Assembly: GCA_907165135.1 (NCBI GenBank)
Contig: OU015568.1
Coordinates: 15,387,208-15,451,207 of the forward strand
Origin: Oikopleura dioica
Taxonomy: Eukaryota; Animalia; Chordata
Direction of reading: 5' to 3'
DNA: 64,000 bases
The notes beneath the pieces were generated by a model that did no database searches, was not told where the DNA came from, and worked only from the letters and a program-made list of their open reading frames with translations. Position 1 is the first letter of the stretch; every line of letters begins with the position of its first letter. Below, piece after piece: positions 16,034-20,300 of this stretch. The translations under genes and the position numbers were made by a program.

Positions 16034-16684
16034 ATTGAATCCAGTGGATGAGTCTACAAAAACTTTCAGAGTTCATGGAACTTACATTACGCAGTTTTCT
16101 AAAAAGGGATGAACAAGAGCACGCCCATTTGGCGCTCAATCATGACACCGAGGGTTCCCACAAATCCCGTTATTTCATACAGATGATTCGGGTATTTGCA
16201 CTATAAGCAGCAGCACCCTTCAATCGTTTTTACAGTAGCTTCTCTTATATATTTTTTAAGAAATACAGTAGCTGGTCTTGCTCTCACGGTGCTTATAGAA
16301 AATCTAAAATCGTTAAAGAAACAGTAAGAAATTGAATGTTTTTATTTGGTTTTAATCCTCATATCTTCCCTTCTGTAAAAAGTAAGTTCTGTCACGTTTT
16401 TATAAGAGAAGTCGTCATTCTTATAATCTTTAATAAATGAAAAACTGTGATGAAAAATTATAAGTTGCTTTTAAATATAATATTTGAGAAGTGAAATCGG
16501 CCTGATTGGCGATTGTGATTTTATACGAACACCGTGACAGACGAAATTCGGAACTTTCTTTCTAAATGAGACGGTTTTCCTCGCCGATTAATATCGATTA
16601 ATTTGAAACATAATTTCAATAAGAAAAGGTCAATTTGATGTACAAAGATCATTTTTTTATTTTTGGAAAGAAATTATTTTGTCT

Positions 16685-17358
16685 TTAATTTCCCTTATTG
16701 TCTTCAGTCACCGGGTCGTTTGTGGATATCTCGCAGGTATCTCCTTCAAAGCCAGGAGGGCAAGAGCACATAAAAAATGTTCCATTAGGCAAAACTGGTC
16801 CATTTTCAAGTTTATGATAAGAGTATAGGAGGTGACATTTTCCACCGTTTTTACATGACTGATCAAAGCAAAGAGTTTTTCGCAAAATGGCCCAGAAAAT
16901 CCGTATTTGCAGTGGCATTTAGGTTTTGGGCCGTCGTGATTGTCGGGATCGGGAATCAAATATGGGCTCATGCACATTCCAAAGTTTTCACATCGCCGAG
17001 TTTCGCACGTTTCCTGATTTTCGACCGCTAATGATTCGGTACCAGATTGCTCAATTTTTGGCGTTGACGGGGAAGAATTCTTGAGCAGCAAGATTGCAGC
17101 AACAATCAGAATAAGAAAGGTAGAAAGAGCTACAATGAACTTCGTTATCTTCGTTATAGAGTTGATCTAAGGGGGTTGACATGAAGATTTTCACGATTTT
17201 AGCATTTTTGTATCAAAGAATTATCATGGAATCAACTCTTCGAGGGGCTAGAGTATTACTACAGTAGAATTGAAAACAGCTGGATCGTAATTCTTTATGT
17301 CAACCCCCTTAGCACGGAGCGAAGGGACTTTTCCCTCCTCAAGCTCGATCGTTTTCAT
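16685..17358 (-). CDS. Type II membrane or signal-anchored protein with two EGF-like domains
   Basis: ATG 17358 gives MKTIELEEGKVPSLRAKG; an intron at 17304-17167 is followed by INSITKITKFIVALSTFLILIVAAILLL (TM). EGF1 is CETRRCENFGMC...CHCKYGFSGPFCE and EGF2 is CFDQSCKNGGKC...CSCPPGFEGDTCE. One frameshift lies in the T5 run at 16876-16880. Confidence 0.75.
17167..17312. mobile_element. Harbinger/Tourist-like MITE that coincides with intron 1 of the EGF gene
   Basis: TIRs CTAAGGGGGTTGACATGAAGA (17167-17187) and TCTTTATGTCAACCCCCTTAG (17292-17312) match at 20 of 21 positions, in a C-TWA-G context. Confidence 0.8.
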
Positions 17359-20300
17359 TTTTGATTCTCTTGAATCCACAGAATAGCTTATTTCGAAGGT
17401 ATGTTCTTTAGATTAAATGAATTATACGATCATTGAGTCGGAAAGATGAATTTTGATGAATATCTAAAATAATATTTTAAGCGATTTTCCGGCTGAAAGC
17501 GTTCTTAAAATATTTTCTTATTAATAAAATAAGGTATTTTTAACCTGTTTGTTTAGGCTCATTTTCAGCTTGAAAATAATTTCTAACTCGCGAGTTTTAT
17601 TTTATAACGTGGAATCTAAAATTGAGCCTTGTCCACTTGAAAAATGAATTGAGCCGAATCCGCAAAAATTGGCGGCTATTACGGCGGATTTCGCCGCCAT
17701 TCGCACTTTTCAAGATTCTGACGGCATCTGCTTGAACCCACTTTGCCCAAACTTGAGCCGCTCGCAATTTACTTGGATACGTATCCCAAGAATCTCAGAT
17801 CTCTTAATCAAAACTAAAGCTTTAAAAATACAAAATGAGAAGAGTTTGCACCTTATTTTTCGACTGAACACCGACTGCTTCATTTATCTGCTCGTTTTTA
17901 TCAGAAAATTAACGTTTTGACACCCTTTTTTTACTTATAAAACTGGATCAACGTTTGATTATCTTTTCAGCGAAAGAAAATATGGGTATCACTTTGTTAA
18001 CTCCGGCTGAAAATGTGAGGAATAATCTCAATTAATGGTGGCTACCCCCTTATTTCAAGTTGCTTCATAACTGATTTTCGAACCTACCAACCCCATGTTC
18101 ATTTTCAAACAACCATCAATTTTCCATTCACTTCAATCGCAAATTCTCAATTTCAGCCTTCTTCCAAATGCCTGCTCCATCAAATTGAAATTAGAATTGG
18201 TCTTCTCAAAAACTTGCAGCGATTAAGCAAAATCGTCAGAAACGAATTTCAATCATTTTCCCCACCAGTTAATTTTCTTTACAAGTTGTTGAACGAATTC
18301 TCGGCTCCGCGAAATTATTCCCAATTTAGCAAAAATGGAATTGGACAAAATTTCACCTTGTCGCTCATAATTTGCGCGGATTAATCCGCTAATAACGAGC
18401 CCACCCATTGTCGGATAATCTCTTATTCGAAATTATACGCTGTATCAATAATCCACTACCCGGCAAAATGTTTCAACTTCGAAATCGAATCAGGACTAAA
18501 CGGCAAAATTTGCAATTCCGACGAAAAAATGCAGCGATCTTTTCATTAAAAACGGAAACCTCTTCCTCTTCCGAATAATCAAGCCACCAAAATAATTAAG
18601 GGAGTCACCAAGATAAGCCCGAAAATCGCCAAAGTAGTAAAGAAATAATTGCTTATCTAGAATGACGAAATAGAAGTCTCAAATAGGCGTTGAAATTTTA
18701 TTTCTAGGAACTCTGTTTGGGCTAGACGCCATAATCAGCCAGACAGCGCAAAATTGAATCATAATTCGATCCGAGTGCAACTTTCACCTTGGTATTTCTA
18801 AAAGCTCTAAGCAAAACTACCCGCTAAATCTGCATTCTTAACCAAATCTGACATTCACGCAATTACTCCCCGAATTTTCACTCAAAAACGATTCTTTTCT
18901 AGCTCTGAAGCTCTTCATAAGAAAAACTGGAGCCATATGTTGCGGGAGGAGTTAAGCCGACGAAGATGCTTTTTCAACCCTTTTCACAAGCTTTATCGGA
19001 TACCTGCGGGAACCTTTTATACGGGGATTTTGTTCGGCGAACATAAAGGTTTTTCCCGAGAAAATCTTCTTCCAAAACGTTGATGCTGCAAAATGAAACA
19101 TATTTTTGATATTTCAGAATAAATTTATTATGTGTTCACAAGTAGGTACGAAGTAGGACTGACAAAACATGCTCAATTGATGCGGGTAATTAAGTCTTCA
19201 TTTAAAAATTATATTTTAACGATTTTATTTTTTATTTTCTTTGTTTTCGATTCTTCATTTTAACCATCTTCATTCTCAACTTAACATTTAAAAATTTAAT
19301 TTTTTATTTGCTCATTTTTCATGACGAAAATACCGGTCGTGATATTGCAAGAACATCAAGCTTTGGCCTCCGGTTATTCTTCTCAGTCAATTCGTCCATT
19401 AAAATCACTAGTAGATTTAAACAAGAATTATTAACCACATATTTTCCTTGAATTTAAAGAAAAATACCAAGTTGTAAAATTCGTTTTACTACTCAAAAAG
19501 CCCTTTTTCTTTTGCCAAGTGAACTCACGTGACCCGTAAATCCAAAACTCTTTAATTTCGTTGTAAAAGGCGACTTTCTTTTAGTAAATTCGGGGGACAA
19601 AGAAATATTTATTGAGCAAACAAGAACAAAAATAAAAAGAAAGTTTAGCTGTTTACGAAATGGGGCTTTCTGTGTGTTGCCGTAATAAACGTGCGGAAAA
19701 GTGGCAGATTGAATCTCTGCGGATCGAAGAGCTCGAAAATCCCTTTGATAAAAACAGCAATTTAAAACTTGAAAAAGAGTAAAACCGGTTCAAGAGCAAG
19801 AGAATTTTTTCTGTTTATGCTTTTTGTTGTAAGATGCCAAAACAAGTAAATAAAAAGTGTTCCGTTGAAATAATTATACAGCGGCTTTTATGGTTAGACA
19901 AAGAATGACTACCGTAATTCAAAGGACATAACAACTGCTTTCAGAAGAAGGAAAATGGATAACGTAGCTGTTGAGAAAATAGAGTTTACTTCAAAAGCCT
20001 CTTTTCAAACTAATCAAAATAAGATGGCAAAATTTTGTAGAAACACTTGTAAATGGAGACCCGAAATTTAATGGTATCAACTCGAAACACTAAATGAATG
20101 GAGGTCCCTTAAATAAAGCTTTGACCAAAATTTGTTCGACCTGGAGGGACATTTCTATTAATTTATAAATCGAGTAATTTAAACATCATTTTTGTGGTGC
20201 TGTAGTTATCATTTCGAAGATCTTTGCTTTCATGTTTTCATCGTAATCGATTCACGAAATGGAAGAAGCATTGTTCATTCTTGTAAATTGCAAGTTTTTG

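What the first reader, a model, noticed from the sequence alone, without database searches (positions are those of the whole stretch)
17167..17312. MITE that forms an in-frame spliceosomal intron (introner-like intron gain) in the EGF gene
Seen on the minus strand: CGT GCT AAG GGG|GTTGACAT...ATGTCAACCCCCTTAG|ATC AAC. The left TIR supplies a GT donor and the right end an AG acceptor. The 138-bp intron contains an in-frame TAG, so it must be spliced. GT splicing adds one Gly; a GG donor after AAG would restore the ancestral RAKIN exactly. The flanks are C-TAA-G and C-TTA-G, and the TTAG version is the better acceptor. Known: TE-derived intron gain has been reported in appendicularians. Inference: Harbinger-type insertion into CTWAG sites is pre-adapted to create introns.
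Basis: partly seen in the sequence, partly recalled or inferred. Interest (0 to 1): 0.8.

Follow-up and report, generated by a model that had tools for sequence, protein, structure and literature searches.

The report
Transposon in exon, possibly new intron
A small cut-and-paste transposon sits inside the first coding exon of a small EGF-domain membrane protein gene of a planktonic tunicate. Related gene copies lack it and it could be spliced out in frame as a young intron, but no RNA could be read and a nearby frameshift means it may be a broken allele.

Summary
A 138-bp core, GGGGG...CCCCC (17171-17308), carries 24-nt inverted ends (17167-17190 / 17289-17312). It interrupts a minus-strand ORF between ...PSLRAK and INSITKITKF, and it contains an in-frame TAG.

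- **It is an insertion.** An orthologous contig (L040) and an intronless paralog (L075) both read straight through the site.
- **It is transposon-derived.** The element is single-copy, but its ends belong to a genome-wide inverted-repeat family. GGGGGTAGACAT occurs 34 times, against 2 in the control.
- **It is not Harbinger-type.** The family is flanked by TTAA in 22 of 30 ends and has GG termini, so it looks Kolobok-like.
- **It could be spliced in frame.** A GGGGGT end landing at TTAA|G allows GG-AG removal with no footprint, or GT-AG removal that adds one Gly.
- **There is a second case.** Another copy of the same subfamily (L007) splits a 473-codon ORF in the same way. In both copies the acceptor reads TAG, not the AAG expected from TTAA|G.
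- **Splicing is unproven.** Four RNA runs laid no reads. The donors are weak and lie inside a 16-bp stem. An A5 run puts EGF2 out of frame.

I put "young intron" at about 0.45 and "broken allele" at about 0.38. The scan has noted similar cases elsewhere in this genome.

The parts
17305..17358 (-). Exon 1: ATG (17358-17356) to GGG, encoding MKTIELEEGKVPSLRAKG. The last codon, GGG (17307-17305), is transposon-derived.
   Evidence: The coding frame is conserved with the ortholog (MKATDVEEGEVPSLRVK). dN/dS for exon 1 is 0.38.
17289..17312 (-). 5' inverted arm in gene orientation, CTAAGGGGGTTGACATAAAGAATT. It holds both candidate donors: AAG|GG at 17307 and GGG|GT at 17304.
17171..17308 (.). Core of the non-autonomous TIR element, GGGGGTTGACAT...ATGTCAACCCCC, 138 bp. 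It is single-copy as a whole, but its termini belong to the GGGGGT[A/T/G]GACAT family.
17248..17250 (-). In-frame TAG inside the element. An unspliced message would end after 43 codons.
   Evidence: ORF 17248..17379.
17167..17190 (-). 3' inverted arm in gene orientation, ...ATGTCAACCCCCTTAG. The candidate acceptor AG is at 17168-17167. The flank is TTAG where the family has TTAA(G).
16876..17166 (-). Exon 2, frame A: INSITKITKF, a transmembrane segment (FIVALSTFLILIVAAILLL), then EGF-like domain 1 (CETRRC...PFCEK).
   Evidence: Pfam EGF is weak here (15.5 bits), but the six-Cys pattern is intact. 64% identical to P0001.
16876..16880 (-). A5 run where the reading frame changes by one base between EGF1 and EGF2. 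It is either an assembly error or a real frameshift.
   Evidence: The paralog L075 has the two EGFs contiguous (FCELTPCSENPC).
16685..16876 (-). EGF-like domain 2 in frame B (TLCFDQSCKNGGKC...GFEGDTCEISTNDPVTEDNKGN), with its stop codon at 16685-16687.
   Evidence: Pfam PF00008, 26.1 bits, E = 1e-5, above the 21.5-bit cut-off.
17429..17444 (-). Upstream non-coding block TTTCCGACTCAATGAT, conserved with the ortholog contig. It shows that L040 is genomic DNA of the same locus.

Best explanation
A 138-bp non-autonomous cut-and-paste element landed in the first coding exon of a small type-II membrane protein gene. The gene encodes a short cytoplasmic N-terminus, one TM segment and two EGF-like domains. 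The genome looks like Okinawan Oikopleura dioica.

The element belongs to a TTAA-flanked, GG-ended, Kolobok-like family. It begins with GGGGGT, and the duplicated target was followed by G. That geometry lets the spliceosome remove it in frame in two ways:
- AAG|GG...TTAG|ATC (141 nt, zero footprint, gives RAK-IN).
- GGG|GT...TTAG|ATC (138 nt, one extra Gly).

I think it most likely now behaves as a young lineage-specific intron. The 3' flank was later changed from TTAAG to TTAG, which gives a TAG acceptor where the unaltered target would give AAG.

Shown: the insertion, its transposon ancestry, its absence from the ortholog and paralog, and the in-frame geometry.
Inferred: that it is spliced, which donor is used, and that the acceptor change was selected.
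For: - **Insertion.** Ortholog P0001/L040 reads PSLRVK|VNSLTKITKF without interruption. L040 includes the conserved upstream non-coding DNA, so it is genomic. The paralog L075 is a single 174-codon exon through the site.
- **Transposon ancestry.** The arms are 24 nt. GGGGGTAGACAT occurs 34 times against 2 in the control. The 16-mer with up to 3 mismatches occurs 668 times against 320. Terminal similarity reaches 35 nt with L067 and 23-28 nt with L039 and L029. Other members are 64-400-bp elements with TTAA at both ends, such as L027, L032, L067 and L068.
- **TTAA flank.** 22 of 30 ends.
- **Geometry.** In-frame GT-AG and GG-AG options exist.
- **Constraint.** dN/dS against the ortholog is 0.33 at dS 0.74. 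All 12 EGF cysteines are intact.
- **Parallel case.** L007, of the same subfamily, reads ACT TTC AAG|GGGGTTGACATC...CCACCCCTTTTAG|CTA ACA. Taking it out leaves a 473-codon ORF whose spacing matches its own second module and homologs P0002-P0004 (GDRTF-x-L). In both exonic copies a G follows the target; the background rate is about 20%. In both, the acceptor is TAG, not AAG.
- **Literature.** TIR-derived introns are documented in the larvacean Fritillaria borealis (PMC11282704; bioRxiv 10.1101/2025.08.15.670264). 11% of introns in the Okinawa O. dioica assembly are non-GT/AG (PMC8008620).
Against: - **No RNA evidence.** The four RNA runs offered laid 0 reads on 16551-17450. They may be another cryptic lineage, or the gene may be silent in them.
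- **Weak donors.** GGG|GTTGAC and AAG|GGGGTT match the U1 consensus poorly.
- **Buried sites.** The donor and acceptor pair with each other in a perfect 16-bp stem. The hairpin energy is -52.4 kcal/mol, z = -7.3.
- **Frameshift.** An A5 run (16876-16880) puts EGF2 out of frame. This fits a dead allele better than a working gene, unless it is an assembly error.
- **Imperfect flanks.** They are CTAA and TTAG, so a TTAA origin needs two later changes.
- **Ortholog also interrupted.** L040 carries a different MITE inside EGF1 that no G*-AG intron could remove in frame. The gene may therefore tolerate disruption.
- **No family-wide trend.** Most family copies do not lie in coding flanks.
Confidence: 0.45

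Rival explanations
1. Broken allele or young pseudogene. The transposon disrupted the exon, is not efficiently spliced, and the gene copy in this haplotype is non-functional. The in-frame GT...AG / GG...AG geometry is a by-product of the GGGGGT end and a TTAA|G target.
For: - The A5-run frame change lies between EGF1 and EGF2.
- The donors are weak and both splice sites sit in a 16-bp stem.
- 0 RNA reads were laid.
- The ortholog contig also carries an unspliceable-looking MITE in EGF1.
- No frame errors appear in about 650 codons of L007 and L075, so an assembly error here is not the default expectation.
- Earlier notes on this genome describe similar insertions, one of them segregating.
Against: - Apart from one frame change, the gene is undecayed. 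There are no stops in either frame segment, all 12 cysteines are intact, and EGF2 still scores above Pfam's cut-off.
- Both flanking target copies are altered, so the insertion is not brand new. An old dead gene should show more decay.
- The same acceptor change (AAG to TAG) and the same following G are seen in L007, which interrupts an otherwise intact 473-codon ORF.
Confidence: 0.38
2. It is an intron, but with different boundaries. An internal donor outside the stem, such as GTA|GTAATA at 17259 or ACT|GTAGTA at 17262, would join to the AG at 17167. That would exonise 15-16 codons of the transposon (GVDIKNYDPAVFNSTV) and leave a 93-96-nt intron.
For: - One search lists these as in-frame, stop-free combinations lying just before the TAG.
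- GTAATA matches the general GTAAGT consensus better than GTTGAC.
- These donors are not sequestered in the terminal stem.
Against: - It would add 15-16 residues to a short, conserved cytoplasmic tail, which is contiguous in the ortholog and paralog.
- There are no RNA data.
- The parallel copy L007 has a different interior, so a shared mechanism would more likely use the shared ends.
Confidence: 0.1
3. One reading: a PIF/Harbinger (Tourist-like) MITE with a 3-bp TWA duplication in a CTWAG target.
For: - At this one locus the insertion is the core plus 3 nt (141 = 138 + 3).
- The flanks C-TAA-G and C-TTA-G differ at a single base.
- This is the most parsimonious reading if only this locus is considered.
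Against: - Family ends show TAA 26 times and TTA 2 times next to GGGGG. TTAA occurs in 22 of 30 ends.
- Complete copies have TTAA at both ends.
- L007's insertion is the core plus 4 nt.
- TTAA with purine termini fits Kolobok/T2-MITE (PMC6004289).
Confidence: 0.05
4. It is not a transposon. The hairpin would have arisen by local inverted duplication or DSB-repair filler. The right arm contains GTCAAC, which is also the ancestral exon sequence after AAG in the ortholog.
For: - GTCAAC occurs in the arm and at the ortholog junction, AAG GTC AAC.
- The element is single-copy.
Against: - The arm matches a dispersed family over 16-35 nt, including subterminal bases.
- Three other loci carry the exact 12-mer in the same TIR context.
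Confidence: 0.02

Closest known systems
MITE/introner-derived introns of the larvacean Fritillaria borealis (Henriet et al. 2019, as summarised in PMC11282704 and bioRxiv 10.1101/2025.08.15.670264)
   Same: Both are appendicularian tunicates. A non-autonomous TIR element sits at a lineage-specific position in coding sequence. The splice sites coincide with the terminal inverted repeats, and a hairpin brings the ends together.
   Different: The Fritillaria introns are mostly AG-AC / AG-AT, number in the thousands, and have been shown to be spliced. Here the candidate sites are GT-AG or GG-AG, the element is single-copy, only one sister case was found, and splicing is unproven.
Introners of algae, fungi and dinoflagellates (Huff et al. 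2016; Gozashti et al. 2022, PMC9860276)
   Same: A DNA transposon whose end plus the target duplication supplies the splice sites, so that insertion into an exon can be neutralised by splicing.
   Different: Introners are defined by many near-identical intronic copies. Here the family is old, heterogeneous and mostly outside coding flanks.
Kolobok superfamily / T2-MITEs (Xenopus; PMC6004289)
   Same: A TTAA target site, purine-purine (AGG/GG) termini, and short non-autonomous copies.
   Different: No transposase was linked to this family here. The TIR sequence (GGGGGTAGACATC) differs from the Xenopus subfamilies. At this locus the flanks read CTAA / TTAG.
Earlier notes of this scan on the same genome (s1-409169, s1-367542, s1-330336, s1-393139, s1-336586)
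   Same: TTAA-flanked, GG-ended elements inside coding exons that could be removed as GG-AG introns. None has RNA proof.
   Different: - They involve different genes. Where I looked (L090, L091), the TIR sequences also differ.
- This case has altered target copies.
- It has an intron-less ortholog and paralog.
- It has a same-subfamily sister case.

Membership tests
Transposon-derived spliceosomal intron (introner-like) | Transposon hallmarks (TIRs, target duplication) coincide with the intron ends | tested here: met
   The 24-nt arms end at 17167 and 17312, and the candidate donor and acceptor lie inside them. The target copies are imperfect (CTAA / TTAG).
Transposon-derived spliceosomal intron (introner-like) | Removed from the mRNA by splicing | tested here: inconclusive
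   Runs X4, X5, X6 and X1 laid 0 reads on 16551-17450. There is no evidence that these runs are of this lineage.
Transposon-derived spliceosomal intron (introner-like) | Position absent in orthologs and paralogs (a recent gain) | tested here: met
   L040/P0001 and L075 are uninterrupted at the site.
Transposon-derived spliceosomal intron (introner-like) | Many similar copies acting as introns in other genes | tested here: not met
   The element is single-copy. One sister copy sits in a coding ORF (L007). The remaining family ends (34 of the 36 examined) show no enrichment of coding flanks.
PIF/Harbinger (Tourist-like) MITE | A 3-bp TWA direct target-site duplication | tested here: not met
   TAA 26 times and TTA 2 times on oriented ends; TTAA in 22 of 30. 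At this locus TAA and TTA are not a direct repeat.
Kolobok-like / T2-MITE | TTAA target duplication | tested here: met
   Met at family level: TTAA in 22 of 30 ends, and TTAA at both ends of L008, L027, L032, L067 and L068. At this locus each flank matches 3 of 4 bases.
Kolobok-like / T2-MITE | Purine-purine (RR / AGGRR) termini | tested here: met
   The ends are GGGGG...CCCCC. The hallmark is taken from PMC6004289.
Kolobok-like / T2-MITE | Mobilised by a Kolobok DDE transposase with matching TIRs | not tested
   No autonomous partner with these TIRs was found. The 3.9-kb element of note s1-357721 ends in TTAA-GGACCCCC, which is a different TIR.
piggyBac MITE | TTAA target with CCY...RGG termini | tested here: not met
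   The termini are GGG...CCC, the opposite polarity. The piggyBac terminus rule is from my own knowledge.
EGF-like domain protein | A six-cysteine EGF fold that scores above Pfam's threshold | tested here: met
   EGF2 scores PF00008 26.1 bits against a 21.5-bit cut-off. EGF1 is below threshold (15.5 bits) but has the C-x4-C-x5-C...C-x-C-x8-C pattern.

The most novel reading that the evidence does not exclude
In Oikopleura dioica, a superfamily of TTAA-targeting elements that begin with GGGGGT is pre-adapted to make introns. Any insertion at TTAA|G can be removed in frame at once, either exactly (GG-AG) or with a 3-nt footprint (GT-AG).

Selection would then tune the 3' target copy from AAG to TAG, as seen independently at this locus and at L007. 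Such elements would be a continuing source of the species' lineage-specific and G*-AG non-canonical introns.
Probability: 0.25. Interest if true: 0.75.

Novelty: new member of a known kind. Interest (0 to 1): 0.5.

Why it matters
How new spliceosomal introns arise is a long-standing question. O. dioica is famous for massive lineage-specific intron turnover and for about 11% non-GT/AG introns, yet I found no demonstrated source for them in the papers I could reach.

This locus is a datable candidate. It has a clear 'before' state (the ortholog and paralog), an identifiable transposon family, and a simple geometric reason why the reading frame survives. It also has a sister case that shows the same acceptor change.

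If junction reads confirm splicing, the cryptic O. dioica lineages would let intron birth be studied between very close relatives. If they do not, this is an ordinary gene-breaking insertion.

Tried and rejected
- **RNA evidence.** The look-up of sequencing runs returned only runs with the same species label. Read laying on X4, X5, X6 and X1 laid nothing, so this is no test.
- **More orthologs.** A metagenome scan by protein alignment and another by a conserved 28-mer were both empty. The word search with exon 2 found only P0001.
- **Searching with a joined model.** Not done.
- **Splice-site weight matrix.** Two ab initio attempts on about 0.2-0.3 Mb of fetched sequence gave no consensus. Donor and acceptor strength is therefore judged only by eye against the general consensus.
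- **Autonomous partner.** The region of note s1-357721 has a different TIR.
- **TA (Tc1/mariner-type) duplication.** Considered and rejected: T at position -4 is conserved in 25 of 30 ends.
- **Pattern search for further acceptor-tuned copies.** This gave 8 hits against 4 in the control.
- **Big HMMER search and third word search.** Not used. Representatives at 50% identity would merge all the orthologs.

Full report
**Organism and place.** The window is G000:C1:15387208-15451207 of a 64.28-Mb assembly in 19 pieces. That matches the published OKI2018_I69 assembly of Okinawan Oikopleura dioica, which is 64.3 Mbp in 19 scaffolds (PMC8008620). Earlier notes of the scan name the same species. This identification is an inference.

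**Observation.** Searches confirm inverted arms at 17167-17190 and 17289-17312. They are 24 nt long and 92% complementary, and the outer 16 nt are perfect. On the minus strand:
- The ATG lies at 17358-17356.
- The frame reads MKTIELEEGKVPSLRAKG up to 17305, and GTTGAC follows.
- The element ends ...ATGTCAACCCCCTTAG at 17167.
- ATC AAC TCT... then continues in frame into a transmembrane segment and an EGF-like domain.
- Read-through stops at TAG 17250-17248.
- The core GGGGG...CCCCC spans 17171-17308, which is 138 bp.

The TIR 12-mer occurs twice in the window against 0.11 expected.

**The gene.**
- Exon 2 (17166-16876) encodes INSITKITKF, a TM helix and EGF1.
- EGF2 (16876-16688, stop at 16687-16685) passes Pfam's EGF threshold.
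- EGF2 lies one base out of frame with EGF1. The change falls in an A5 run at 16880-16876.
- A paralog 1.24 Mb away (L075:1255-1779, minus strand) is a single 174-codon exon with the same architecture and contiguous EGFs (FCELTPCSENPC).

The frame change in the window is therefore either an assembly error or a real frameshift. I could not test which.

**It is an insertion.**
- The word search with exon 2 found one relative, P0001, 64% identical. It is encoded on a 742-nt ENA metagenome contig, L040.
- L040 aligns with the window through the upstream non-coding DNA, including the block TTTCCGACTCAATGAT. It is therefore genomic DNA of the orthologous locus.
- L040 reads CGT GTA AAG GTC AAC (RVK|VN) where the window has CGT GCT AAG [141 nt] ATC AAC.
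- The paralog is also uninterrupted at the site.
- dN/dS between the window and L040 is 0.33 at dS 0.74. The gene was therefore constrained for most of the divergence.

**It is transposon-derived, but not as classified.**
- The 146 bp as a whole is unique in the genome. The exact 12-mer occurs only five times, two of them here.
- Allowing mismatches shows a family. The 16-mer has 668 hits against 320 in the control. The one-base variant GGGGGTAGACAT has 34 exact copies against 2.
- Similarity to the window's element extends 20-35 nt inward: L067 80% over 35 nt, L029 86% over 28 nt, L039 91% over 23 nt.
- Members are 64-400-bp elements. L027 and L035 are 88% identical over about 390 bp.
- On 30 unbiased ends the outside 4-mer is TTAA 22 times. 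The 3-mer next to GGGGG is TAA 26 times and TTA twice. A direct TWA duplication would give equal numbers, so the Harbinger reading fails.
- TTAA with purine termini is the published hallmark of Kolobok/T2-MITEs (PMC6004289). The lead to Kolobok came from earlier notes of the scan. No transposase was linked to the family.
- At this locus the flanks are CTAA and TTAG, and the insertion is the core plus 3 nt. A TTAA origin therefore needs one substitution in exon 1 and the loss of one A just before the AG. A TAA/TTA reading needs one substitution. I prefer the former because of the family data, but the locus alone cannot decide.

**Why the frame survives.**
- Consider an element beginning GGGGGT inserted at TTAA|G.
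- A cut after the first G and after the second ...TTAAG removes the element plus one target copy exactly (GG-AG).
- A cut before GT leaves GGG behind, which adds 3 nt (GT-AG).
- Both options exist here: 141 nt from 17307, or 138 nt from 17304.
- One search also lists other in-frame G*-AG pairs. One is the internal donor GTA|GTAATA at 17259, which lies outside the stem and looks stronger.

**A sister case.** Of the few other copies with the exact GGGGGTTGACAT end, one sits inside a long ORF: L007, G000:C4 at about 5.969 Mb.
- It reads ACT TTC AAG|GGGGTTGACATC...CCACCCCTTTTAG|CTA ACA.
- Taking out the element plus 4 nt leaves 473 open codons.
- The junction (GDRTF-K-L) has the spacing of the protein's own second module. 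It also has the spacing of homologs P0002-P0004 (GDRTFGL), which match at E down to 9e-65.
- As in the window, a G follows the target. The background rate is about 6 of 30.
- The 3' flank is no longer TTAAG. It reads TTTTAG here and TTAG in the window. In both, the acceptor has become TAG rather than AAG, and in L007 the pyrimidine run is also longer.
- Two independent loci with the same change hint at selection for splicing. This is two of two and post hoc, so it is only a hint.

**Against splicing.**
- No RNA read was laid from four runs. Those runs carry only the species label, and the species is a complex of cryptic lineages, so this is no test.
- The terminal donors are poor matches to the general consensus.
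- The donor and acceptor pair with each other in the hairpin (-52.4 kcal/mol, z = -7.3).
- The A5 frame change argues for a dead allele, unless it is an assembly error. L007 and L075 show no such errors in about 650 codons.
- L040 carries its own element of about 270 bp (TIR GGGCTCGGCAAGCTGA) inside EGF1. Only CC-AG or AG-AT cuts would restore its frame. The gene may therefore tolerate disruption.
- Most family copies are not in coding flanks.

**Verdict.**
- The insertion, its family and the in-frame geometry are solid.
- The intron status is open. I put the terminal-site intron at 0.45, a broken allele at 0.38 and an intron with an internal donor at 0.10.
- Transposon-born introns are known in many eukaryotes and in the larvacean Fritillaria borealis (PMC11282704; bioRxiv 10.1101/2025.08.15.670264). 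The scan has already noted similar cases in this genome.
- This is therefore a new member of a known kind, of moderate interest.

**Method notes.** I made no search with a joined exon model; exons were searched by reference only. In scripts, exons were joined only to check reading frames.

Noticed in passing
window 16876-16880 (minus strand): An A5 run sits where EGF1 (frame A) and EGF2 (frame B) are one base out of register. EGF2 is otherwise intact, and the paralog has the two domains contiguous. This is either a homopolymer assembly error or a very recent frameshift.
   Followed up: partly
L040:431-705 (ENA contig of the ortholog): The ortholog carries a different TIR element of about 270 bp (GGGCTCGGCAAGCTGA ... 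TCAGGTTGCCGAGCCC) inside the EGF1 exon, after CENFGECNS, flanked by ATAGCC repeats. No G*-AG cut restores the frame; only CC-AG or AG-AT would. The same TIR family occurs in this genome (L077:1591-1689, and beside the copies in L013 and L023).
   Followed up: partly
L007:1355-1512 (G000:C4, about 5,968,865-5,969,022), minus strand: A second exonic copy of the GGGGGTTGACAT subfamily splits a 473-codon ORF of a two-module protein with no Pfam match. Homologs P0002-P0004 match at E down to 9e-65. It shows the same AAG|GGGG|GT...TAG| geometry.
   Followed up: yes
L015, L025, L028 (G000:C1 at 0.38, 13.05 and 16.84 Mb): TTAAGGGGCTTGACAT marks the edge of long arrays of a 55-56-bp tandem repeat (AAGGGGCTTGACGG...). 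The satellite apparently grew out of, or ends in, a related TIR.
   Followed up: no
L075:1255-1779 (G000:C1:16,627,966-16,628,490), minus strand: An intronless 174-aa paralog with a TM segment and two EGF domains, 1.24 Mb from the window's gene.
   Followed up: partly
window 17429-17444 (minus strand): A 16-nt upstream block, TTTCCGACTCAATGAT, is identical in the ortholog contig about 70 nt before the ATG. It is a candidate promoter or 5'-UTR element.
   Followed up: no
window about 18038-18051: A lone family-like end (AAGGGGGTAGCCAC, 3 mismatches) lies about 740 bp upstream of the element. It may be chance or a decayed copy.
   Followed up: no
L090 near 285-299, L091 near 270-300: The ends of the elements in earlier notes s1-409169 and s1-393139 read TTAA-GGGGGTGGTGGTCG and TTAA-GGAGGGGGTCAACG. 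They are TTAA-flanked, G-rich termini, related in style to this family but not identical.
   Followed up: partly
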